Part shown: positions 19,218-34,668 of the stretch, in pieces
Layout: every line of letters begins with the position of its first letter
Position numbering within the stretch: the first letter of the stretch is position 1
Position numbers and translations under genes: made by a program
Notes under the pieces: model-generated
Databases searched by the model: none
The model's input: the letters and a program-made list of their open reading frames with translations, nothing else
What the model was told of the DNA's origin: nothing
Assembly (NCBI GenBank): GCA_977030845.1
Contig: OZ365110.1
Location: 21,762,001-21,826,000 of the forward strand
Source: Fimbriosthenelais zetlandica
Taxonomy: Eukaryota
Reading direction: 5' to 3'
DNA: 64,000 nucleotides

Positions 19218-19406
19218 AAGTAATAGGCCTAATCCTATATTGTTCTACACACAGGTAGGCCTATGTAGCCTAGGCCGATCAAATTTCATGTAAGAACTAA
19301 GCCTGGCCTATAATTTTAATGGAGCCTAGTCAGTTGCAGGCCTCGTTAGGCTTGCCTCGCTTGGTCCTGGCCCAATCTATAGGTAGGCCTAGGCCTAGAC
19401 CTAAGC

Positions 19407-20877
19407 TAGGGACTCTAATAAAAATTTTAAAATCGTTCTTTAATTTTTTAAATATGACCAAGGGCTGGATGTTGGGCGGAATTAGACAAAACTTTTTAAA
19501 TGGAGTGAATATCTTTATCCGTTCAGAAGTTATCGGGGATTGAACGGCCAGAAAATGGACAAGATTTCTCACTTTTTTACTATAGGCTATCGGAGAAGGA
19601 ATTGGCCACGTCACTGTGTAATGAACGTCTGTTTTTTATTCTGTCACACAAACTTTACTTTTCAACCAATTTTTGTCAAATCTTCAATATATATTCAAAT
19701 TATCTGGTGTTAAATGATTATGCAAGACTATTTGACCTTTGACCTTGTCGTCCCCTCGTAATATGTAGGTTAAAAGTCACTTGTTCTAGAGAATCAATGC
19801 TAAATGACTGCTTTGAATCAGAAATCTAATAACGGCTTTTACTCTTTCATCTTAAAGCTCCATATTCTACATATCTTAAGCTACGTATAGGTTTTTGTTT
19901 CATCGAGATCGACCCGGTAATTGCTTCAGAATTTAAACTTAAATTAACGCTGTTCTCGGACTAAAATTGTTTTGCCTTGTGGTGGTCTCACAGTGCAGCG
20001 GTCATTCACTTTCTGAGTAAGGCCAGAAAGTTGTAATGTTTGTTTCTGGTTCAACGACTGACCGTCATAAAATCCCCCATAGAATCGCCGACGTCATCGC
20101 CATTCTTTAGCTAAAAACAAAACTCTAAAGTCCTGACTCTCCTCTGAAAAATTGAAATCTACGTTGGTCTTAAAAATGTTATGTGACCTGAAACAGTATT
20201 TTGTTATTTGGCCTAACTGTAGTAGGCTGGGCCGCATGGTAAAAAATACATGAAGAATCTATTTGGATATTACATAGACTGCGCCGGTCCTAATACAATC
20301 CAAACCGACATGATTCTGGTGTAGAAATGTCGAAAAAGGTTTCTAAACCTTCAAAACGAACGCCCCGCTTATAATTTCCAGAGATTTCGGCGATTAATTC
20401 TCCGCTCGGAGCAGACGCTCGGCCTTCCTATGGCAGTTTAGTGTATTAGCCAGACATGTCGGGAAACGTCAAGGTAGAATCTTGCGTTCTATATTAAACA
20501 GACTGCGCCGGTCCTAATATCAATATAAATTACTGATTATGGAGTAAAAATGTCTGAAAAAGCCGACTAGATCATCAAATTCAGCGCCCCGATTAAAATC
20601 CTTGTAAATATTTGCGATTGTAAGTTACCCCGTTTTCTCTTGGACAATAGACATAGGAAGGACTGGTCGTATTATTATCAAAAAACGACCATCATGTACG
20701 TCGATTCGTGTTCTTTCAAATGCAGTAAAGTAGAAGTTGGTCAGATATGTTAGGACTGAGCAATGCCTCAAAACGTGAACACTACCAAATCAGTACTGTC
20801 AAGTCGCGACCCAATTTTCACATGCCCAGCTGGGTGAGAATTTGAGCGGTGGATTGCACGCGTTACTAGAGTCCCTA
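19407..20877. mobile_element. Non-autonomous TIR DNA transposon, copy 1 (1471 bp, 7-bp TSD CCTAAGC)
   Basis: Ends TAGGGACTCTA...TAGAGTCCCTA (14 of 15 bp TIR match). Direct repeat CCTAAGC at 19400-19406 and 20878-20884. Inverted twin at 29923-31393. No transposase ORF. Confidence 0.9.
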
Positions 20878-22155
20878 CCTAAGCCTTGGGTGTACCTTGG
20901 GTGTAGCCCAAGGCCCCCTAGACCTAGTATATGTATTCAACAATAGAGTTTGTATATGAGTGAATACGTTTAATAAAGTAATCAAGTTTCTCATTTCACC
21001 ATAAAGTTGTAGCAATGTAGGTAGGCTACCTAGGCCCTAGGCTTATTCCAGTTGAAGGGCTGACCCAAGTGGACTGTTAGGTTTTTTTTTAGCCTATACC
21101 GGTACCCCCTATCAAAGCGAATATGCCTCGGCTTATTTTTTGTTTTGAAAAGAAAGTCCACAAGATCATATGGGCCCACACGTTGTAGCCTATCCTGGAT
21201 GGGTTTTCTTTTTCTATGAACTTATAATGACCATATTTGTTGCACAATTACAAAAGGCTCTTTCAATATATAAAAAGGAAATGAAAATATTGGCTCTATC
21301 TATGCATATATGACGAAAGTTCGTGGCTTGTTATTTGAAGAGATTTCATGGATGTCTCTCTAGACTTCAAAAAGAGTTGTTTGTTTTAGAGCGGATAGTT
21401 CCGTGAGGCAATCCCTGAAACGATCTACATGTAGGAACTTATAGCCTACATGTAGGCCTACAGTAGTAGCCTGGTCATGATATTATGCAAACATACGGAG
21501 TAAAAGTGATGAAAACCGACTATAGGCCTATGACTTCGTGGACTGCATGGAAAATGTATTGGTCAATAAGCCTAATTATAGAGTGCTTAATGCCTAGGCC
21601 AGCTGAGCTAAATGCCATTTTTACTTTTAAAATCCAACTTTATTTTTATTTGCCACTAGTGATTCCCTCTATTTAAAATGTCAAAAAGATTAAAGGAGAA
21701 AAAAATGGACCTTGAGATGCATAGAGCTGGGCCGGGTCGATGAAGCCGGATAGGCCTACATATATAGGCTATAGATGTATGCATAAGAGTGAAATCCTGT
21801 TCACCTGAATCCCTGGTTGTCAATAATGTCATTTTAAACAAACTATTATTTAGGCCTTACAATCCCCAAATTTTCAGGGTGTGGTGTGAAAGTTTCACTG
21901 AGTGGGATTTTTGAGATCACCTAGATGGTTTATTTTCCTAGAAGTAGGCCTATGGGTATGTGGGCCTTATACTTCCCCCAGGAACATGATGTCAATGTAT
22001 ACTAACTCTGCGTGAGCTCATGTACCATCCCACATAAGCAACTCGTGTATGATCCAGGAGTTTCTTATCTATTGTGGAAACAATGTCCACCTAAATCCCT
22101 ATAAGCAAACACACATACCCCCTCCCACCTCATAGTTCCTGGTGAGTCTAACTAG

Positions 22156-22162
22156 TATAAAT
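22156..22162 (+). promoter_or_regulatory. TATA box of the chitin-binding protein gene
   Basis: TATAAAT ~105 bp upstream of the ATG at 22265. Confidence 0.5.
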
Positions 22163-22264
22163 GTGACATGAAATCAGACAGGAGTATGAATCCCGGAGAT
22201 CAAACCTCAAACAACACATATTTTCACCAGGAACCGAAGAAGGACCCTCGACTCTACCACCAAG

Positions 22265-23771
22265 ATGAAGGTAGGACCATTATTATTGATCCCAGATTAA
22301 ACTATAAAGTTTTGTAATATTTGAAAGCTTCTGAACCTTCTTATATAAAAGGTTGGAAAATTGTAGTTTTATTAATATTTATATGATACATTTCAACGAC
22401 AAGGGCTTTATAACAAAATCTAAATCATAAAAGTCTCTCATGATAATGGAAATAGGCATTTGTTGTATCATTTTCTCAAACCACGTCATTTATGAACAAG
22501 ATTTTAGGAACAATGCGTGGGTTGTTTACAATGTGGGGTGTTACTAATAACTTACATGTTATCGTTGTATTTTTCAGTTCTTTCCTTTAGCTATCTTACT
22601 GATTCTGGGGACTGTTCTCCTCATTGAACGATCCAAAGCCGCCCCCAGTAGTTCCAGAAGTGAGTAGGCAGCTCGGTAATTTTGACTTTTCTTAATTACA
22701 CTGGTAAATTCAACACTTTATCAACCAATAACTTTACTGTTGAGGATTAGAATATTACCTAAAACACTAATAATATTATATAGGGTCTATAGCTATCTTT
22801 TGTAATAATATTTAGCCTATACATGTAGGCCTATTAGTTTTACATGAGATGTCAAGATTGATTTGTAGTAATGTTAAACAAAAAAATTATCCTTTCTCTT
22901 ATATTTTACTTATTATACCGTACCTAAAATATCATAACTCAGTAAGAGTAATGGGATACTCATGATTTACACAATATCGTATAAAATTACATGTATTTCT
23001 ATAATAAATCCATTTACAGGTAGCGAGTGGGATGATGAATCTGGATCAGATGAACTGAAAGATAGCAAGGACGATAGTAGTGATTGTGATGAATCGAGTG
23101 AAGGGGCAAGTGAACCAGAGAGCGAAGGAACGAGTGAGGCAGAAAGCGAGGGAACGAGTGAGTCAGAAAGCGAGGGAACGAGTGAGCCAGAGGGCGAGGG
23201 AACGAGTGAGTCAGAAAGCGAGGGAACGAGTGAGTCAGAAAGCGAGGGAACGAGTGAGCCAGAGGGCGAGGGAACGAGTGAGCCAGAGGGCGAGGGAACG
23301 AGTGAGTCAGAAAGCGGTAAGTCTATAATTATGGCCTGATGTTGAGCCAAAGGACATGTAACAGGCCAACAACTTTTGAAAGCTATTCTACATTGGAATC
23401 GATTTGCCTGGCTTTGAATTATTAATGGTTAATTAACAAGTAATTTCTTTCGTTATTCGGAAGTATTTCCCGCTTTATTTCAACATAGAATTAATTAATT
23501 ATTAATATTTTCTGCGTCTTTGTCTCTTCACCATGGGTAGCCGACTAATCCCCATCCTTCCTTATACTTTGCAGAATGGTTGTGTTCTGAAACTGGTCTC
23601 TTCCCCAACCCTTACGACTGTGGTCATTTCTACCAATGTACTGCTGAGGGTCAGGAGCCCTATGACATGATTTGTCCTAACGGTCTTCACTTTAACCCTG
23701 TAAACAAATGGTGTGACTGGCCGGCAAACGTTAATTGTACTCCAGCGGTAAATGTGCCCGCCCGAACATAA
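22265..23771 (+). CDS. Secreted protein with a Ser/Glu-rich acidic repeat region and a C-terminal chitin-binding type-2 (peritrophin-A / CBM14) domain
   Basis: Exons 22265-22270, 22578-22659, 23020-23316, 23575-23771 (GT-AG, phases consistent). Signal peptide MKFFPLAILLILGTVLLIERSKA; 9 octapeptide repeats EGTSE[S/P/A]E[S/G]; six-Cys domain C-SETGLFPNPYD-C-GHFYQ-C-...-C-PNGLHFNPVNKW-C-DWPANVN-C. Confidence 0.88.
23100..23315 (+). repeat. Coding 24-bp tandem repeat, 9 copies
   Basis: Unit GAGGGAACGAGTGAG(T/C)CAGA(AA/GG)GC. Confidence 0.92.
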
Positions 23772-24359
23772 TGCCCAACGCTCATACATACGAACCTCTC
23801 TACTGGCAAAATGTGTATTATATTATATAAAAGGGTGGTGTTCCTTCACTGACCATCTAAACTATAATTCAATATTAGAAATGTGGTAATTAATATCATT
23901 CTCCATTTTAGAAATATGGTAGGCCTAATATAGGTATCACACACTCCGTATTTTAAACTATATGCATGTCTAAACGTTGACCAAAGATGTATTTGAGATT
24001 TAAATTAAAAAAAATGCCTAAAAAAATTTCCTGTCCATTATAATTATGTTAACTGGTTTAAGAGTGATAATGGTATAATCTGGGCTCTTATTAAGGAGAA
24101 TGTTACGGCTAATAATAGCTTAGAAACGGACCCATGGACACAGACGTGTTAAAATCGCACCAAAATTAAACCACGTACAGTGCAGGGCCTTTCATTGGTT
24201 CCTGACATGCATGGTTTTCAAAAACATCTCCGGGAAGTTCCTGTTCATCTGATTTAATGTAGTGTCTAGACTAGAGCGTCTAGAGTAGAGTACTTAACGT
24301 TAGCGTTTAGAGAAGCGTACGTAAAGCTTATACAGGCCATGTATAAAAGGTGGGGTGGC

Positions 24360-24684
24360 GTGGGTTGGGGGGTGGGGGGATCCAGGACTTCGCAAAAGCG
24401 GATCCACAGTGGTGTTGCAGCCCACCCACCCCCCCCCCCCTCTTAAATTTGCAGGACATTTTCCCAACATTTTCTCTTTTTTTCGGGAGTGGCGGGGGAC
24501 CCCGGTGATTGGGATCCATCCCTTGGGGTATAACCTGGGATATGCAACTGATTAAGGTAGGCGGGGTTAGGGGGTGGATGGGTTTAGACTTGGATATAAC
24601 TTTTTGAGTGACAACAAATCATCTCCGCGGGGCGGGGGTTGGGGGACACCCTAGACGCCCCCCCCCCCCTTTGATCCGTCACTC
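24360..24684. mobile_element. Decayed or nested GC-rich MITE fragments
   Basis: GGATCCAGG near 24375 and CCCCCC...GATCCGTCACT near 24672 resemble ends of GGCGGATCC-type MITEs; G/C homopolymer runs; boundaries uncertain. Confidence 0.3.
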
Positions 24685-25218
24685 GGACGGTAGGGTAATA
24701 GTGAGACCGATGGGAGTAACTTGGAGCAGCTCGCCTCAGCGAACATTCATACACAGCATGTGAGCAGCTTGGATCTCAACAGCAGACGCCGAAATAATCA
24801 ATAAGTTACAATCAAATTTTCAATTACTGAACATATAATCTAAGGAATAATGATAATAGAGAAGCAACAATATCTCAGGATGAGAGCTTTGGAGTTAAAT
24901 TTAAGAAGCTACATGGTTTTTTCCACTTGTTAATTTGACCCGCCTATCTGCGCATCTCAGGCCCACACAAACCCAACATATTGGATCTAATTGACATAAG
25001 GATATTTTTGCATAACCTATGGCCAACGTCTTCATCAAGGTAGGCCTACTTGAACATGGACTTTCTAATTTATCGATGAGAAATCGTAACATAATAATAC
25101 AATCTTTTTAAGGCGAATGGTCCATAAAAGTTACTTCTATTTAATAGCCACTATTTACATGTATTATACATAGGGCCAGGCGTTTCAAACGTACAGTACG
25201 TGTACATGTGTATGATGT

Positions 25219-28200
25219 CCCAGCTAACAAAATACTTCCATTTGAGGTTCGCCAACGTTAAGATAAGGCAATTATTACCAACGTCTGAAAAAATACCTCT
25301 TTTAAACGTTAATTTAACGCCATTAATAAAGAGTACTAAAAGGCAACCTCAAATTTACGTTAAATGAACTGTTGTTATCCAAACCTATTTAATCACAACG
25401 TGTTTTGACGTTAGAAAAAACAACATCCTAAAAACCAACGTTAAATAAACGTTTCTACAAAAAGCGTTGTGATTCTGACAGTGAAAATAACGTTGATTAT
25501 TATGATGTCAACTAACGTTAGTTAACGAACGTCTAATAGACGTTTGAAAACAGAAGGTTGGTTACCAGAGGTGAAAATGACGCTGGGTAATAAGATGTTC
25601 CTTTACGTTTAGAAGTCCAACAGATAATTGATGTTCAGAAAATGAACGTTGCCTATATGGAGGTTAAAAAGATGTTTTTAATAAGATGTTCTTTAACGTT
25701 TAGAAATCCAGCAGATAATTGATGTTCAGAAAATGAACGTTGCCTATATGGAGGTTAAAAAGATGTTCTTAATAAGATGTTCTTTAACGTTTATAAATCC
25801 AACGGATAATTGATGTTCAGAAAATGAACGTTGCCTATATGGAGGTTAAAAAGATGTTGGTTAATAAGATGTTTTATAACGATTAGAAATCCAACAGAAA
25901 ATTGATGTTTAGAAACAGAACGTTGGTTATCTGAACGTGCAAAACATGTTTTAAAAAGATGTCAATTAACGTTCACAAATCCACCAGATAATTTATGTTC
26001 AGAAACAAAACGTTGGTGATCTAGAGGTGAAAATGCTGTTCGTTATTAAGATGCTTTTTAACGTTGAGTAATCCAGCAGATAATATATGTTCAAAAAATG
26101 AACGTTGGATATCTGGAGGTCGAAATGGCGTTGGGTAATAAGATGTTATTTAACAGTTAGAAATCAAATGGATAATACATGTTATGAAACCGAACGTTGG
26201 TTATCTGGAGGTGAAAAAACATAATGGTTAAAAGGATGTTCATTAACAGTCAAATATCCAACGATTTTACCTCAAAACAACCTCCTGTACCAACGTTTAT
26301 GTACCAAGTCACTTTGACGTTAAATTGCGTGGACTCAAAACGCCGTCAATTTGACATTAAAAAAACGTTGGTATTTATTTTCTATAAACGTATAATTGAC
26401 ATCAAATCAGCGTCATTTTGACGTCTATCATAATGAAAATTGACCTCAAATTCACATAACGTCATAACTTCAAATTGCCTACAAATTCACATTGGTGTAA
26501 ACATCAAATAGCCATCAAATTAAGGTTAGATCTAATGTTGGGCATGTCGTAAAATCAACATCAAATTGACTGCTAATGATCTACAATATACCTCAAGTTC
26601 ATGTTGATTATTACTCCAAATTGACCTCGAATTCACATTGGCCATAACTTCAAATTGCTTTCAAAATCACATTGGTGTAAACATCAAATAGACATCAAAT
26701 TAAGGTTAGATCTAATGTCGGGCATGGCGTAAAATCAACATCTAATTGACTCTGCTAATGATCTACAATATACCTCAAGTTCACGTTGGTTATTAGTTGA
26801 AATTGTCCCCGAAATCACATTGGTGATTACTTACAAATGACGTCAATTTCACACCAGTTTAACATGAAATAAACATAGAGTTGATGTTGGCTCTTAACGT
26901 TCAAATATCCACCGGATAATATATGTTCCAAAAATGAACGTTGGTTATCTGGAGCTGAAAATAACGTTGAGTAATGAGATGTTTTTCGGCGTTCAGCAAT
27001 CTAACAGATTATATATTTTCAGAAAATGGATGGCATTAACCAGAGTTTAATAGACATCAGTTCTAAGAAATAGAGTCTGGTGATTAAGAGGTGAAATAAT
27101 GTTGAATTGCTCAACATAAATTGTTAACCTTAATCAAACAACCTTCGAGAGATATTTAGAAAATGAACTTCAGTGATTAACAGGTGAAAATCTAAATACT
27201 GAAATCTTAATACTGAATGATAGTAAAGGTGATTTTACAAGTAAAATAACGTTCTTTGCGTGGGTCTTGGCTAGTTCATGAAATGCTCACTGGGGATCTT
27301 TTGACCCAGGACACATAATTTAATAAAGTTACAAATCCTCAATTTATCTTAAATAGCACCAAACTTTAATGTCACTATTTTTACCTGAATATTATATATC
27401 AATCAGATTTTACCAGACACTTATTTTATTTAGGCATTTACCAAAGAGGTTTCAATACAAACTTACATTTTGTTAATGTCAACACCTTGTATGTGTGCGT
27501 TAAATGTAGAACAGTTTCCAGGAGTTAGAAAAGGCATTGAACAAAAAGTAGTGTGCAACATGTAGTACGGAAAATCATGTTATCCCTCAGTTGTGCACTA
27601 ACTGTCATCCATGGTCTTTACATGGACAACAGGTACGATGAACATGGCCAATGAAAGGGCCATGCAAAATCAGTCCGCTTCAGGTAGGGAAGGCCTCGAG
27701 AGTTGGGACCCCGGGTTTGGGGAACCTGACTAATAAGGTTGGCGACCTTTAAGTCAGGGGCCTCAACTCTACCCCAGGACCAATTCTCCCTGCCTTACTC
27801 TATCTTTTATCAGATTATAAAACCATCATACAATCCACATTATTTCAATGAGGCCATATTTATGACTTAATATTGATGTTAATTTGCTGTTTAAATTACC
27901 TTAAGGCCAAAGTAAATTCTATGTTTATTTTATGTTAAACTAATGTGAATTTGAAGTCAATTTGAAGTAATAACCACCGTGAACTTCAGGTATATTTGAG
28001 ATCATTAGCAGAGTCAATTTGATGTTGATTTTACACCATTCTCAACATTAAATCTAACCTTAATTTGATGGCTAGTTTCTGTTTATCAATGTGAATTTGA
28101 AGTAAATTTGAAGTAATAACCAACGTAAACGTGAGGTATATTTTTGATCATCAGCAGAGTCAATTTGATGTTGAATTTACACCATGCCCAACATTAAATC

Positions 28201-28516
28201 TAACCTTAATTTGATGGCTATTTAGTGTTTACACAAAGGTGATTTCGAGGGCAATTTGAAGTTATGACCAATGTGAATTTGAGGACAATTTACTTTATGA
28301 TTGACGTAAAAATGGGGAGCTATGAGGTATCTTGACGCTGATTTGATGTCAATTTTACATTTATAAAAAAAAATTGCCAACGTTTCTTTATTGTCAAGAT
28401 GACGGTTTCTTGAGTCCACGCAATTTGACGTAAAAGTGACTTGGTCCTTTAACGTTGGTTTATTCAAATACAGGAGGTAGTTTTGAGGTAAAATCGAAGT
28501 AATTTTGTTAGCTGGG
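25219..28516. mobile_element. Non-autonomous EnSpm/CACTA (CMC)-type DNA transposon, 3298 bp, 2-bp TSD GT
   Basis: TIRs CCCAGCTAACAAAAT(T)ACTTC at both ends; GT at 25217-25218 and 28517-28518; extensive AACGTT/GACGT-rich subterminal arrays, as is typical of animal EnSpm elements. No transposase. Confidence 0.82.
25530..26260 (+). repeat. ~91-bp tandem array inside the EnSpm element
   Basis: CAGATAATTGATGTTCAGAAAATGAACGTTG or variants recur at 25621, 25712, 25803, 25895, 25985, 26077 and ~26169. Confidence 0.85.
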
Positions 28517-28980
28517 GTAGGCCTAGCTGGCTATATAGGCCCTACCCATTCACGACGTCTTTATCGATCCACCAATCTAAGGTTCTTCTTGGGTCATGAG
28601 TATTCGGGGCATACAAAGGAAGAATCAGTCATGATTAATTGATTTTATTAACGGGCTGCCACAAGTGATTAAAAGTGTAGTACTATAGCCCAACTGTGGA
28701 AAGTCCACATCTTATACTTACCATCCATTATAACCCTTGGCAGATAGGACATTCAAAATTGTAATCAAATTTTGTAAAACGTAATAATAGCCTACAATTG
28801 AGGCTAAGGGAATTCTACTCTGATAAAAAGAATATTTTATAATTAGCCAACTATTTTCAAAGGGATAATGAATGATAATGAATGATTATAATGATATGAA
28901 TTGTCTCGTGTCATATAACAATCCTCTATATATAGCAGCAGCAATCAGGAACACAATGTGATCAGTGAGGGAAATGCATC

Positions 28981-31900
28981 ATGGGGTGTTGCGGCCAGGA
29001 ACGCACCTCTGATGGCAGGGTTGGTCCGCTGCAGGTGAGACAATTAATTAAGGCCATATAGAAACACGTTTTATTCCTTATTTTTAATAACAAATCATGG
29101 CAATCCGAAATTATACTAGTTAGGTTATGCCAATAAATCTTTTCAGGGTGAAATAAGGGATGTAGACTATGATGACCATTTTGATGGTCCATTGGAGAAA
29201 AGGTCCTGCACCGACGTCTTCTTCGTTTTATTGTTAATTGCTGCAATAGGAGGAATGGTAACGATTTCATTTCAGTTTTTTCTGAGAATTCTGAAACTTG
29301 CGATATTGAACGTAGCCTACACATCATCGATCTTCTACAATTTGACCTCTTTTACATTTAGGGTTATGTGGGTTACTTAGGGGTGATTGATGGTGACCCG
29401 GAAGTAATAATATTTGGTCGCGACAGCTGGGGTAATATTTGTAACAAACCTAACGTTGCTATTCCGAATGTCAACCTGTCAGGACGGAATATGACTGGTT
29501 TATCGTGAGTAAAATTCCAAACATCAAAATAAGAACATCGGAATTTATCCAATTTCATAGTCGATCATCATCGAGCTTTTCTCAGAATATCTCATATCTC
29601 TTTATGTTCATGAAAGATCGAACGTATTGCCTTGTCTTTTCAGGAGGGTGTATTATTTTGAATTCTCATCCTTACTGGCTCCAACTCTTGTGTCTGCCCC
29701 AGTCCTCTGTGTGAGGAAATGCCCGGATGTAAACCTTGTCACCGTTGGTGACCTTCAGGACTTCGCCCTTAATTTTAGTTCCACACTCTGCCGTTACGAT
29801 GTCGCTGTGAAAGACTACCAGAACGGAAGTACCTTGTGTCCCTCACTTCCTGTTATTCCACAGTATGCTTTCCAGAAATTCCATTTCCTGACTTCTCTAA
29901 TTCAAGTAGGCTAGGCCTATATTAGGGACTCTAGTAACGCGTGCAATCCACCGCTCAAATTCTCACCCAGCTGGGCATGTGAAAATTGGGTCGCGACTTG
30001 ACAGTACTGATTTGGTAGTGTTCACGTTTTGAGGCATTGCTCAGTCCTAACATATCTGACCAACTTCTACTTTACTGCATTTGAAAGAACACGAATCGAC
30101 GTACATGATGGTCGTTTTTTGATAATAATACGACCAGTCCTTCCTATGTCTATTGTCCAAGAGAAAACGGGGTAACTTACAATCGCAAATATTTACAAGG
30201 ATTTTAATCGGGGCGCTGAATTTGATGATCTAGTCGGCTTTTTCAGACATTTTTACTCCATAATCAGTAATTTATATTGATATTAGGACCGGCGCAGTCT
30301 GTTTAATATAGAACGCAAGATTCTACCTTGACGTTTCCCGACATGTCTGGCTAATACACTAAACTGCCATAGGAAGGCCGAGCGTCTGCTCCGAGCGGAG
30401 AATTAATCGCCGAAATCTCTGGAAATTATAAGCGGGGCGTTCGTTTTGAAGGTTTAGAAACCTTTTTCGACATTTCTACACCAGAATCATGTCGGTTTGG
30501 ATTGTATTAGGACCGGCGCAGTCTATGTAATATCCAAATAGATTCTTCATGTATTTTTTACCATGCGGCCCAGCCTACTACAGTTAGGCCAAATAACAAA
30601 ATACTGTTTCAGGTCACATAACATTTTTAAGACCAACGTAGATTTCAATTTTTCAGAGGAGAGTCAGGACTTTAGAGTTTTGTTTTTAGCTAAAGAATGG
30701 CGATGACGTCGGCGATTCTATGGGGGATTTTATGACGGTCAGTCGTTGAACCAGAAACAAACATTACAACTTTCTGGCCTTACTCAGAAAGTGAATGACC
30801 GCTGCACTGTGAGACCACCACAAGGCAAAACAATTTTAGTCCGAGAACAGCGTTAATTTAAGTTTAAATTCTGAAGCAATTACCGGGTCGATCTCGATGA
30901 AACAAAAACCTATACGTAGCTTAAGATATGTAGAATATGGAGCTTTAAGATGAAAGAGTAAAAGCCGTTATTAGATTTCTGATTCAAAGCAGTCATTTAG
31001 CATTGATTCTCTAGAACAAGTGACTTTTAACCTACATATTACGAGGGGACGACAAGGTCAAAGGTCAAATAGTCTTGCATAATCATTTAACACCAGATAA
31101 TTTGAATATATATTGAAGATTTGACAAAAATTGGTTGAAAAGTAAAGTTTGTGTGACAGAATAAAAAACAGACGTTCATTACACAGTGACGTGGCCAATT
31201 CCTTCTCCGATAGCCTATAGTAAAAAAGTGAGAAATCTTGTCCATTTTCTGGCCGTTCAATCCCCGATAACTTCTGAACGGATAAAGATATTCACTCCAT
31301 TTAAAAAGTTTTGTCTAATTCCGCCCAACATCCAGCCCTTGGTCATATTTAAAAAATTAAAGAACGATTTTAAAATTTTTATTAGAGTCCCTACCTATAT
31401 GCTTAGGGGTCACCCATATCATATTGAATATTTAGGCCATAGGCCTACGTAGGCCTGCTGTTATAGCTATAAACAACAGTTAGCAGACATGATACCGGAA
31501 ATGTCTTTTTTATTTGCATGAGTTGCATTGAATACGTAGTATTGAATTCTCTAATAATTTTTATCTATTTTGTATCTGTATTGTATCTTTATCATTTAGC
31601 CAGAACATCCTAAACCGATGTGTACCGAAAGCAGCCGTGGGTATAGCCGAGTCCATCTTGGGAGCAGTGACCAATACCTTGTCCCTGATAGAGGTACAGT
31701 GTGAGGAGGCTGGGGACTTCTGGCAAAGGGCAGCCAGGGACCTGGAGAACACCTGGAGGGAAATAGTCTACCTGTCTGCTATAGCTGTAGGTGTGGCATT
31801 GGTCATTACTTTTCTCATGGGTTTTCTGGCCAAGATTATCATCTGGATCATTGTCATAGCCGTGGCGTTGGGTTCTATGGCTGGAACAGGATACTGCTGG

Positions 31901-34668
31901 TAAGATAGACCGACCTATAGAATTTGATAGTGATCTTTTGCTATTTTTGTCTGTCAAACAATTTATGACAGATACACGAACCATAGGCCTAATTGTCGGG
32001 TTTTAACCCAGGTGATGAGTTGAGATTTGTTTCGATATATTTTCAGGTACACCTATTACAACTACAAAACCATGCTGGACAAAATACCTGAAGAGCATCG
32101 TATTGATTCTGATGTTGAAAGAGTAAAATCCTGGTTGATTTATTCTAGTTTAGCGACAGCTGGAACTGTGATAATCCTTCTTGTTCTCCTCGTCATGAGG
32201 TCGAGAATAGCGCTGGTGGCTCAGCTCTTTAGGGAAGCTGGCAAAACAATCCTCAAAATGCCAATGATATTGTTCCAACCAGTATGGACACTAATTGTTC
32301 TGGCCGCCAGTCTTGCAGGACTTGCCTATCTGTTTATGTATATTGAGACTGCAGGTCAGCCCCAGGTAAATTCTCAAACAGGATTTGTCAAGTTTAAGCA
32401 AGGTGATGTGCTATTCTACATGAAGTGGTATTACATATTTTGTGTTCTCTGGTTGGTCCAATTCATCTTTGCTTGTCATCAAATGGTCATCGCTGGAGCT
32501 GTGGCCATCTGGTATTTTAGCAGGTAGGCTAATATTTTTAATAGTTGTAGGCCCTATAATGAAAAGAAGTTTAATGAAAATAAAATTAAAAATAGAAGTC
32601 ATGAATTCATGACTTATTCAAGACGTCAGGGTATCACCGATATATCAATGTAATTATTCTAGGGATAAGAAGCTGGGCTGGCCCATTCTTGAATCAATGA
32701 GGCGGCTGATCCACTATCACCTTGGGTCCGTAGCTTTTGGCTCACTCATCATCGCCATCGTGCAACTCGCCAGAATCATTCTGGCATATATACAGAAGAA
32801 GTAAGCTCTCCATTTTGCAAATCAATTAAATTATTTTGTTCGCGAAGGGTCGATGTACACCTACCACAATAAAAAGGATATAGAATTTAAGATATATGAA
32901 ATCTCAAACTTAGACGATTTTAAATGATGTCAATGAGTAATACATATAGTCATAGCTAGAACTATACGGTACAGAAAAGATCCTAGGAGGTGGAACTAAA
33001 GGTGTATTGAACCCTAAAGCCTTAATCTGGTTGAATCTATAGTTGCTTGATGCAGGCCTGATCAGGATAACTCAATCCGCGGCTGATGACCATCCATACA
33101 AGTGTCTATTGATCAAATATCGATTAGTTCGGCAATTAATTCACGTTCTGAATATTGATAATCAATTGTACAATCATAGTTGGGTATATATATAAGTGCC
33201 TATACTAATACATGTATACCCAAGTATATGTCTTGTTTCGAGGAGAGTGCATGGATGCCTCAACAGAGGACAAGTGCACCACCTATAGATGCGTATTATA
33301 ATAACGCATGCCAACCAATGTTTAACTACGGTAATTGAATATGAATAGTTGAAGTTTTTCATCTGTCTTTAACCATTTCAGGGTTGCTGGAAAAACAGAC
33401 CCATTGGTTGCGTTTCTGTTTAAGTGTCTACAGTGTTGTTTGTGGTGTTTTGAGAAAGTTCTGAAATTTATCAATAAAAATGCATACATTATGGTTGGTA
33501 AGGACCCAAATTGCTTATACTTTTTCTAATAACTCCCAATTCAATTAATTCATATTTATAACTGATATTAATTCACTGGAAAACATATACGATCTATTCC
33601 GTTCAATCTAATCATTTCAGTCTTATTTTTTTCCAGCCATATACGGCTACAGTTTTTGCAAGGGAGCACGAAGAGCCTTCACCCTTCTACTTTCTAATGT
33701 GTTACGAGTAGCCGCCATTAATTCTGTTGGTACCTTCATTCTCTTTCTGGGCAAGGCGGGAGTGGTGGCAGTAACAGTCGTCATTGGTTTACAATTATTT
33801 AAAGTAAGGAAATTGTTACAGCCATTTGCTCTTCGGTTTCCTTGCATGATAATACATGAGTTATGTATATGAAGACACATATGTAGGCTTTATATAATAT
33901 TGCTTGCAGAAACATGGAAAATTGTTTATGGTAGTTGATCGCAAAACTTTTCCAATTGCTAAAGAACTTAATTAATAATTATTATTCATAAAATATCTTT
34001 GTTATTTTTCAGTCAAATACTACTCTGTGTTATATCTGGGTGCCCTTGATATTTGCTGGAATTGCTGCCTTCCTTGTGGCTCATACATTTTTGTCCGTCT
34101 ATGGGATGGCCATAGATACCATCTTCCTCTGCTTTTGTGAGGATTGTGAGAGGAATGATGGAATCATCAAACCCTATTACATGAGTAAAGATCTCATGGT
34201 AAGTAAGATTGATTTAATTGAATTAGTATATTGATACTAATTAATAATTGTGCTATTGATTCTATTATTAATTGACAATTCATTTTGTACTCAAACCCAT
34301 GAGACCCATTTACAATGAGATCACGACGCTTAAAACCATGTACGTTTTGGGGTTGTTTATTAACAATTATCCCTCCCCCTCCTTTATTACCGGTATATAA
34401 TTTTTCGTTGCAATACGTTAGATTTCTCAATATAATATACACTTTAAACATTCGAACCATATTTTTAATTTCATCTCTAAAGACCTACGTTGAAAATTCG
34501 AATGAAGCTCTAGATGCTTTGAAGAAGAGAGGAATGTTCCCCAAGTTTAAGGGAGGTCGAGTGGTCCCCACTACAGCAATTGAAGTTATGGAGGCGTATC
34601 CTTCACAAGCCGCTCTTGATAGTGGACACATGGGCAACGTACCAGGACCAGCAATATACAGACGCTGA
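28981..34668 (+). CDS. SLC44A1: Choline transporter-like protein (CTL1 / SLC44A1-type), 11 exons, ~698 aa
   Basis: Exons 28981-29034, 29147-29257, 29362-29504, 29644-29862, 31600-31899, 32047-32523, 32663-32800, 33382-33497, 33637-33803, 34013-34198, 34483-34668 (2097 nt). N-terminal MGCC, RSCTD, DSWGNIC, HLGSVAFGSLII, NAYIMVAIYG, AIDTIFLCFCED are hallmark CTL motifs. Confidence 0.92.
29923..31393. mobile_element. Non-autonomous TIR DNA transposon, copy 2 (1471 bp, 7-bp TSD CCTATAT), inverted relative to copy 1, in SLC44 intron 4
   Basis: TAGGGACTCTA...TAGAGTCCCTA; CCTATAT at 29916-29922 and 31394-31400; the reverse complement matches copy 1 in every segment I compared. Confidence 0.9.

What the first reader, a model, noticed from the sequence alone, without database searches (positions are those of the whole stretch)
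19400..31400. Pair of apparently identical, inverted 1471-bp TIR elements with an uncommon 7-bp TSD
Seen: both copies are exactly 1471 bp with TAGGGACTCTA termini, and each has its own intact 7-bp TSD (CCTAAGC; CCTATAT), both starting CCTA. They are therefore two independent, recent insertions 9 kb apart (local hopping), and the interval has not been inverted by recombination between them. Established: TAGGG ends are hAT-like, but canonical hAT TSDs are 8 bp; 7-bp TSDs are known only from a few lineages (as I recall hATw, some P and Dada). The pair brackets the whole CBM14 gene and SLC44 exons 1-4, forming a potential composite-transposon or inversion substrate. This may be an active, undescribed family with target preference.
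Basis: partly seen in the sequence, partly recalled or inferred. Interest (0 to 1): 0.7.

Follow-up and report, generated by a model that had tools for sequence, protein, structure and literature searches.

The report
Sister copies of a young transposon
Two identical 1.5-kb copies of a small, gene-less cut-and-paste jumping gene sit head-to-head 9 kb apart around an animal's chitin-binding gene; they are real and very recent and probably arose one from the other, but the element is an ordinary kind (P-type or hAT-type), not a new class.

Summary
Copy A (19407-20877, +) and copy B (29923-31393, -) are both 1471 bp with 0 differences. Each has an 11-bp TIR (TAGGGACTCTA) and its own perfect 7-bp TSD.

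They belong to a non-coding family of about 75 copies in this 447-Mb genome. Of 34 copies read, 30 have a perfect 7-bp TSD and none has 8 bp. The target is weakly palindromic (n-Y-W-W-W-R-n).

There are two very young subfamilies. The two window copies alone share a private T>C change (2 of 23 genome copies), so they are sister copies. Copies cluster genome-wide (8 neighbour pairs under 100 kb against 1.2 expected), which fits local hopping.

No autonomous partner was found. No other pair of exact TIRs exists in the assembly, and no hAT or P-like transposase hit lies beside a family end. The superfamily therefore stays open. I lean to P-type: 7-bp TSDs are normal for Galileo and 1360, and the genome has 124 THAP9-like hits. 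hAT-type is the rival: the TAGGG ends fit, and Repbase lists hAT families with 7-bp TSDs.

The 7-bp TSD is not novel. A composite transposon is unlikely, because both outer ends are 5' ends. An inversion substrate is plausible. Reads and other assemblies could not be reached. This is an ordinary new family.

The parts
19400..19406 (.). TSD of copy A, left (CCTAAGC)
19407..20877 (+). Copy A, 1471-bp non-coding TIR element. The 5' end is AT-rich and the 3' end GC-richer.
   Evidence: Longest stop-to-stop frame is 77 aa, with no significant Pfam match among the ten longest (best E-value 0.025, far below cut-off), no Rfam hit and no tRNA
19407..19421 (+). 5' TIR TAGGGACTCTAATAA (11 nt perfect, 14 of 15 with the 3' TIR)
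20863..20877 (+). 3' TIR TTACTAGAGTCCCTA
20600..20600 (+). Private T>C at element position 1194, shared only by copies A and B
   Evidence: 2 of 23 genome copies carry C
20267..20519 (+). Internal imperfect direct duplication (29-nt cores 224 nt apart). This is the region where the two subfamilies differ most.
20878..20884 (.). TSD of copy A, right (CCTAAGC)
29916..29922 (.). TSD of copy B (CCTATAT on +). It overlaps a TAGGCCTA octamer at 29912.
29923..31393 (-). Copy B, identical to copy A. It lies in an intron of the SLC44-like gene, about 60 nt after a putative splice donor at 29863.
   Evidence: the donor is inferred from the sequence
30200..30200 (-). The same private variant in copy B
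31394..31400 (.). TSD of copy B (CCTATAT on +)
23541..23768 (+). CBM_14 (peritrophin-A) exon inside the bracketed interval
   Evidence: E 1.8e-13
29120..29862 (+). N-terminal exons of the SLC44/choline-transporter-like gene inside the interval (RSCTD... and CxxKCP... motifs)
   Evidence: The assignment rests on resemblance to CTL proteins recalled from memory. There is no Pfam hit, because the model covers the C-terminal half.
32027..32527 (+). Choline_transpo exon of the same gene, beyond copy B
   Evidence: E 2.7e-28

Best explanation
The two arms are sister copies of a young, non-autonomous (gene-less) cut-and-paste DNA transposon family of about 75 copies. A transposase supplied in trans recognises the 11-15-bp TIRs (TAGGGACTCTA...). 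It joins the element ends to target strands cut 7 bp apart, and gap filling gives the 7-bp TSD. It weakly prefers a palindromic n-Y-W-W-W-R-n site. One window copy, or a lost common donor nearby, gave rise to the other by short-range transposition with the donor copy restored by repair. The result is two independent insertions 9 kb apart in opposite orientation. The enzyme is most likely a P-superfamily (THAP9-like) transposase. I put P-type at about 0.5, hAT-type at about 0.35 and other at about 0.15. Shown: the anatomy, the family, the TSD length, the target logo, the youth of the copies, their sister relationship and the clustering. Inferred: the mechanism, the direction of the hop and the superfamily. 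The class-level part (non-autonomous TIR transposon, two recent independent insertions) holds at about 0.95 whichever superfamily is right.
For: The copies are identical and have their own TSDs. Genome-wide there are 76 5' ends and 77 3' ends against 0 in reversed-pattern controls, mostly paired at 1450-1481 bp. Of 34 copies, 30 have a perfect 7-bp TSD and none has 8 bp. The symmetrised target logo peaks at TSD positions 2 (C/T) and 6 (G/A) with an A/T centre. The element has no coding capacity, RNA family or tRNA. A 195-bp internal-deletion derivative has its own 7-bp TSD (L037). In the young subfamily 14 copies are 0-8 substitutions from their consensus, and a second 1480-bp subfamily is 0-2 apart. 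The private T>C at position 1194 occurs only in the two window copies, 2 of 23 genome copies. A second linked sister pair exists, L027/L028, 53 kb apart with different TSDs. There are 8 neighbour pairs under 100 kb against 1.2 expected and 3 under 15 kb against 0.18 expected, and 28 of 74 copies lie on contig C1. For the P-type lean: 1360 and Galileo make 7-bp TSDs with palindromic targets (PMC3698922, PMC4168063). The genome has 124 matches to the THAP9-like RNase-H domain PF21787, several as multi-copy open frames of 700-755 aa, against 46 hAT dimerisation-domain matches. Earlier scan notes report a P-like element and P-like excision scars with 7-bp TSDs in this genome (s1-188434, s1-188360). 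I did not verify those notes.
Against: No autonomous partner was found. Every exact 11-mer TIR outside the family (55 sites) is solitary, with no +/- pair within 10 kb. None lies beside a hAT or P-like hit except one lone site, C38:1105767 (-), 3.5 kb from a weak, stop-containing P-like match. I estimate the chance of such a coincidence at about 0.07. CAGGGACTCTA and TAGGGACTATA variants are not enriched either. The TIR starts with TA, which fits the hAT terminal consensus (5'-YARNG, from memory) better than the CA-start of known P-superfamily ends. No subterminal inverted repeats of the kind P elements carry were seen. The target motif differs from GTANTAC of Galileo. Only one candidate TIR-retaining excision scar was found, a variant 23-bp palindrome at C19:13164101, within the control count. 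Gene conversion between the inverted copies could also explain the shared variant.
Confidence: 0.5

Rival explanations
1. The family is a non-autonomous hAT element. A hAT transposase lineage that cuts the target with a 7-bp rather than 8-bp stagger mobilises it. Everything else (young family, local hop) stays as in the best explanation.
For: The TIR TAGGGACTCTA is 11 bp and starts TAGGG. This matches the hAT terminal consensus and the maize Ac 3' TIR start (TAGGGATGAAA, from memory). The short TIR has no subterminal inverted repeats. The strongest target positions are the second and the penultimate base of the TSD, as in the hAT Ac-type consensus nTnnnnAn (from memory). The genome has 46 hAT dimerisation-domain hits, including intact 636-924-aa frames and a six-copy family. 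The Repbase paper's example query, which extracts hAT families annotated '7-bp TSD', implies that such entries exist (PMC4455052). Local transposition is classic for Ac/Ds.
Against: The canonical 8-bp TSD is not met in any of 34 copies. No hAT hit lies near any family end or any exact TIR. P-like transposases are about 3 times more abundant here, and 7-bp TSDs are typical of two of the three classic P-superfamily families.
Confidence: 0.35
2. The two copies are not parent and daughter. They are older independent insertions that were made identical, including the shared C at position 1194, by gene conversion between the inverted repeats.
For: 1471-bp inverted repeats 9 kb apart are good substrates for non-crossover conversion. 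Conversion leaves the TSDs untouched, as observed.
Against: Both copies are only one substitution from the young-subfamily consensus, so they are young in any case. A second linked pair 53 kb apart shows the same sister pattern. Copies cluster genome-wide, which conversion does not explain.
Confidence: 0.12
3. One of the two copies, or their perfect identity, is an assembly artefact (a repeat collapsed or copied by the assembler or polisher).
For: Perfect identity of repeats can result from consensus polishing. No reads could be laid, because no run was listed.
Against: Each copy has unique flanks and its own perfect TSD. The copies lie in opposite orientation inside a 57-Mb contig. Other copies on other contigs differ by only 1-3 bases, so identity is expected biologically. 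The private variant is present in both.
Confidence: 0.02

Closest known systems
Galileo and 1360/Hoppel (P superfamily, Drosophila)
   Same: 7-bp TSD. Palindromic target motif. Many non-autonomous copies. Pairs of copies act as inversion substrates by ectopic recombination, recognised by exchanged TSDs (PMC4168063, PMC2775673, PMC3698922).
   Different: Galileo has very long TIRs (hundreds of bp) and the target GTANTAC. Here the TIR is 11-15 bp, starts TA, and the target is n-Y-W-W-W-R-n. No THAP9-like partner is tied to these ends.
BuT5, the roughly 1-kb MITE mobilised by a divergent P element (Drosophila repleta group)
   Same: A non-coding element of about 1-1.5 kb with very short TIRs. Its internal sequence is unrelated to any transposase gene. 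It shows recent activity and has potential to cause inversions (PMC3698922).
   Different: BuT5 makes 8-9-bp TSDs, and its master P element was found sharing the terminal 96 and 260 bp. Here the TSD is strictly 7 bp and no master was found in the assembly.
Ac/Ds and other hAT non-autonomous elements
   Same: 11-bp TIR starting (C/T)AGGG. Internal-deletion derivatives. Strong tendency to transpose to linked sites (established knowledge, from memory).
   Different: The canonical hAT TSD is 8 bp; here it is 7 bp in 30 of 34 copies and never 8 bp. No hAT transposase is linked to these ends.
Dada
   Same: TSD of 6-7 bp (PMC3706591).
   Different: Dada has no TIRs and inserts into U6, U1 or tRNA genes. 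This family has TIRs and inserts at varied, mostly A/T-centred sites.

Membership tests
Non-autonomous class II (TIR) transposon | Terminal inverted repeats at both ends | tested here: met
   11 nt perfect, 14 of 15; invariant in the fetched copies whose ends were read
Non-autonomous class II (TIR) transposon | Target-site duplication of constant length, different at each copy | tested here: met
   30 of 34 copies have a perfect 7-bp TSD, and all 30 except one reverse-complement pair (L001/L014) are different
Non-autonomous class II (TIR) transposon | Multiple dispersed copies without coding capacity | tested here: met
   About 75 copies on 11 contigs; no ORF over 77 aa and no significant Pfam, Rfam or tRNA hit
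Non-autonomous class II (TIR) transposon | An autonomous partner with the same ends in the genome | tested here: not met
   No further +/- pair of the exact TIR; no transposase hit beside any family end. Limited to exact 11-mers, and no more genome DNA could be read.
P superfamily | TSD of 7-8 (9) bp | tested here: met
   7 bp; 7 bp in 1360 and Galileo, 8 bp in P (PMC3698922)
P superfamily | THAP-DDE (THAP9-like) transposase encoded between matching TIRs | tested here: inconclusive
   124 PF21787 hits in the genome, but none lies between or beside these TIRs. One lone TIR lies 3.5 kb from a weak hit on C38.
P superfamily | Termini of the CA... type (5'-CANRG, from memory) | tested here: not met
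   The ends are TAGGG...CCCTA
P superfamily | Excision scars that keep part of both TIRs | tested here: inconclusive
   One 23-bp palindrome with a variant TIR at C19:13164101, within the control count; its flanks were not read
hAT superfamily | 8-bp TSD | tested here: not met
   0 of 34 copies. Repbase does list some hAT families with a 7-bp TSD (PMC4455052).
hAT superfamily | Short TIRs with 5'-YARNG termini (from memory) | tested here: met
   TAGGG, 11-bp TIR
hAT superfamily | hAT transposase (with C-terminal dimerisation domain) between matching TIRs | tested here: inconclusive
   46 PF05699 hits, none near a family end or an exact TIR
Dada | No TIRs; insertion into multicopy small-RNA genes | tested here: not met
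   TIRs are present; the flanks are varied and no tRNA or Rfam hit was found at the site scanned (PMC3706591)

The most novel reading that the evidence does not exclude
The family is driven by a transposase that no element with matching ends encodes in this genome. This could be a solo or domesticated THAP9-like or hAT-like gene, or an element with unrelated subterminal sequence that cross-mobilises it. It would represent a lineage with a strict 7-bp stagger, TA-start ends and a C-Y-W-W-W-R-G target that is not yet catalogued.
Probability: 0.1. Interest if true: 0.5.

Novelty: new member of a known kind. Interest (0 to 1): 0.25.

Why it matters
This is a clean, well-dated example of very recent DNA-transposon activity in a probably annelid genome. 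Dozens of copies are nearly identical, and two linked sister pairs document short-range hopping. The pair forms a 1.5-kb perfect inverted repeat. It brackets a chitin-binding gene and the 5' exons of a choline-transporter-like gene. That arrangement is the kind that produced natural inversions with Galileo and BuT5 in Drosophila. The family could serve as a presence/absence marker set and as bait to find the active transposase. It does not change what is known about transposon classes.

Tried and rejected
1. Longer 'copies' as possible autonomous elements (L031 3.7 kb, L032 4.0 kb, L033 11 kb, C1:65.3 Mb 16 kb). These are family copies with nested, mutually unrelated insertions, or with host UGT genes in between. 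None has a transposase frame.
2. Orphan and variant ends (L035/L036, L038-L040, L044-L047). These are TIR fragments inside larger segmental repeats, or chance matches.
3. Exact-TIR census with four patterns that exclude the family. It gave 55 solitary sites and no pairs.
4. The variants CAGGGACTCTA and TAGGGACTATA lie below their controls.
5. Coordinate cross-check of all ends against the hAT and P-like hits. The only coincidence is on C38.
6. Subterminal motif search in the element found nothing shared between the ends beyond the TIR.
7. Scar search TAGGGACT..AGTCCCTA gave one variant palindrome. A local scan of 341 kb for palindromic inserts in 7-bp duplications gave nothing from this family.
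8. Two exact-pattern scans of metagenome contigs found nothing.
9. The look-up of sequencing runs listed no run.
I did not try to read them by other means.
12. Two paper searches (YARNG/CANRG, hATw) returned only noise. Yuan & Wessler 2011 is not held.
13. Dada, piggyBac, Mutator and Transib were rejected on TSD length and/or end structure.
Full report
OBSERVATION. The repeat finder gives a single long inverted pair in 18-33 kb, with arms 19404-20877 and 29923-31396, 9045 nt apart. Reading both arms and comparing them by script shows two 1471-bp elements with zero differences: copy A at 19407-20877 (+) and copy B at 29923-31393 (-). The perfect TIR is 11 bp, TAGGGACTCTA, or 15 bp with one mismatch. 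Copy A is flanked by CCTAAGC on both sides. Copy B is flanked by CCTATAT on the + strand, which is ATATAGG in element orientation. Copy A alone could be read as an 8-bp duplication if the last A of the element were given to the flank. Copy B and the rest of the family exclude this.

THE FAMILY. The window is C10:21762001-21826000 of a 447-Mb assembly in 79 contigs. The element matches at least 41 places at 92-100% identity. A 29-mer from the 5' end occurs 76 times and a 30-mer from the 3' end 77 times, against 0 in the reversed-pattern controls. Most are paired at 1450-1481 bp. I read 34 copies with their flanks.
- 30 have a perfect 7-bp TSD, and apart from one reverse-complement pair (L001/L014) all 30 are different.
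- One has the 7-mer with a 1-nt deletion.
- One has the 7-mer displaced by 6 nt.
- Two have no TSD.
- None has 8 bp.

The rebuilt empty sites give a weak palindromic logo. TSD position 2 is C or T (27 of 30). Position 6 is G or A (28 of 30). The three central positions are almost always A or T. Positions 1 and 7 lean to C/A and G. This explains why both window TSDs start CCTA on the + strand.

The element has no frame longer than 77 aa. It has no significant Pfam match (best E-value 0.025, far below the family cut-off), no Rfam hit and no tRNA. Beyond the TIR its two ends share nothing. Inside there is a 224-nt-spaced imperfect duplication. A 195-bp internal-deletion derivative with its own 7-bp TSD exists (L037). 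This is a non-autonomous cut-and-paste transposon family.

AGE AND KINSHIP. An alignment of 31 copies shows a young 1471-bp subfamily, an older layer, and a 1480-bp subfamily.
- Young subfamily: 14 copies, 0-8 substitutions from their consensus.
- Older layer: 5-23 substitutions from its consensus.
- 1480-bp subfamily: 76 substitutions from the first subfamily's consensus, with most of its copies (seven of the nine aligned) only 0-3 substitutions from one another.

So two masters have been active very recently. The two window copies differ from the young consensus by a single T>C at element position 1194 (window 20600 and 30200). A genome-wide pattern search finds that 29-mer in 23 copies, and only these two carry C. 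They are therefore each other's closest relatives. A second linked pair (C1:15061420 and C1:15114822, 53 kb apart, different TSDs) is likewise identical and shares a private variant. Among 74 mapped copies, 8 neighbouring pairs lie within 100 kb (1.2 expected) and 3 within 15 kb (0.18 expected; P below 0.001 in 5000 random placements). Contig C1, 16% of the genome, holds 28 copies. Some same-orientation pairs could be segmental duplicates, and I could not read them all. Short-range transposition is the simplest reading. Gene conversion between the inverted copies is a lesser alternative for this one pair. Because each copy keeps its own matching TSDs, the interval has not been inverted by a crossover between them.

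SURROUNDINGS. Between the copies lie the following features.
- A CBM_14 exon at 23541-23768 (+), E 1.8e-13. It is preceded by an exon with eight 24-bp Ser/Glu-rich coding repeats.
- Tandem and inverted repeats at 25.5-28.5 kb.
- The N-terminal exons of an SLC44/choline-transporter-like gene at about 29.1-29.86 kb.

The Choline_transpo exons of that gene follow beyond copy B at 31.6-32.5 kb. Copy B thus sits in an intron, about 60 nt after a putative donor at 29863 (this is inference). Copy A lies about 350 bp upstream of the first ORF of an RRM-protein gene on the minus strand.

SEARCH FOR THE TRANSPOSASE. The longer paired ends are family copies carrying unrelated nested insertions or host genes. 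Variant or orphan ends lie inside larger segmental repeats or are chance matches. Four patterns that together cover every exact 11-mer TIR outside the family give 55 solitary sites. That is fewer than the reversed controls, and there is no forward/reverse pair within 10 kb. CAGGGACTCTA and TAGGGACTATA are not enriched.

The genome holds 46 hAT dimerisation-domain matches, with several intact frames of 636-924 aa and a six-copy family. It holds 124 matches to the THAP9-like RNase-H domain PF21787, several as identical multi-copy frames of 700-755 aa. None lies beside a family end. The only coincidence is a lone TIR at C38:1105767 (-), 3.5 kb upstream of a weak, stop-containing P-like match on the same strand. 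By my own estimate the chance of such a coincidence is about 0.07, and its two sister loci show no TIR.

No sequencing run was listed, so no reads were laid. Two metagenome scans were blank.

WHICH SUPERFAMILY. A 7-bp TSD together with TIRs leaves P and hAT. Dada makes 6-7-bp TSDs but has no TIRs and targets small-RNA genes (PMC3706591).

For P:
- 1360 and Galileo make 7-bp TSDs at palindromic targets (GTANTAC), and P itself makes 8 bp (PMC3698922, PMC4168063).
- P-like transposases are the more abundant and visibly young group in this genome.
- Earlier notes of this scan report a P-like element and P-like excision scars, each with 7-bp duplications, elsewhere in this genome (s1-188434, s1-188360). 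These are leads I could not check.

For hAT:
- The 11-bp TIR starts TAGGG, as in the hAT terminal consensus and the Ac 3' end (from memory).
- The informative target positions are the second and the penultimate base, as in nTnnnnAn (from memory).
- There are no subterminal inverted repeats.
- The Repbase paper gives as an example a query that extracts hAT families annotated '7-bp TSD', which implies that such entries exist (PMC4455052).

Both groups are known for local transposition. I put P-type at about 0.5, hAT-type at about 0.35 and other at about 0.15. A search for TIR-retaining scars of this family (TAGGGACT, 0-20 nt, AGTCCCTA) found one 23-bp palindrome with a variant ninth base at C19:13164101. 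This is within the control count, and its flanks are unread.

COMPOSITE OR INVERSION SUBSTRATE. In the inverted arrangement both outward-facing ends are 5' ends and both inward-facing ends are 3' ends. The two ends of the element are unrelated beyond 15 bp, so they are probably not interchangeable. A composite transposon is therefore unlikely (inference). Ectopic recombination between 1471 bp of perfect inverted identity is plausible. Galileo and BuT5 are direct precedents, where inversions are recognised by exchanged TSDs (PMC2775673, PMC3698922). Here such an inversion would cut the SLC44-like gene in two, so it would probably be selected against.

VERDICT. The finding is real, well defined and young. 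It is an ordinary non-autonomous DNA transposon family with a TSD length that is already known in two superfamilies. It is a new member of a known kind, and interest is low to moderate.

Noticed in passing
window 14993-58198 (37 sites; e.g. 19384, 19390, 29912, 31440): The octamer TAGGCCTA is about 30 times over-represented in the 341 kb in hand (0.38 per kb against 0.0125 expected). In the window it clusters at 14-41 kb. Four of 30 family insertion sites lie within about 25 bp of one, including both window copies.
   Followed up: partly
L034 (G000:C1:65315932-65325931) and C1:65332465-65332494: A 5' end and a 3' end of the family lie in the same orientation 16 kb apart, with two UDP-glucuronosyltransferase ORFs between them (L034 3249-4553, 7833-9170). 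The 5' end plus 30 bp of flank is tandemly duplicated (501-608, 695-1233). This is either a split copy or a gene-carrying macro-element; the right flank was not read.
   Followed up: partly
L027 / L028 (G000:C1:15114822 and C1:15061420): A second linked pair of identical copies, 53 kb apart, from the 1480-bp subfamily. They have different TSDs (GTGAAGG, ATTATAG) and share a private variant.
   Followed up: yes
window 22938-23340 (+): The exon upstream of the CBM_14 domain holds eight in-frame 24-bp repeats encoding SEGTSE(P/S)E, an acidic Ser/Glu-rich tract.
   Followed up: no
window 25587-28459: A 91-bp tandem array lies at 25587-26218, and several 85-89% inverted repeat pairs lie between 26.3 and 28.5 kb. 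This is probably other, older repeats in the intergenic stretch.
   Followed up: no
G000:C19:13164101-13164123: A 23-bp palindrome, TAGGGACTATA-A-TATAGTCCCTA, made of two copies of a one-base variant of the family TIR. It is a possible excision scar; the flanks were not read.
   Followed up: no
L011 (G000:C11:46819141-46820617): This copy has its 7-mer ACATGAG repeated but displaced by 6 nt on the 3' side, giving an imperfect 12-13-nt duplication.
   Followed up: no
L045 2671-2704: A 20-bp near-palindrome, CAGAGAGATTAGTCTCTCTG, lies inside a 7-bp direct repeat, GTGAGAG. It may be a TIR-retaining scar of another 7-bp-TSD family, though the sequence is partly low-complexity.
   Followed up: no
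L031 1626/3890 and L032 1375/3944: Nested insertions of 2.3 and 2.6 kb lie inside two older family copies. The host-element overlaps are 5 and 3 nt, which suggests TSDs of other transposon families. No long ORF is present.
   Followed up: partly
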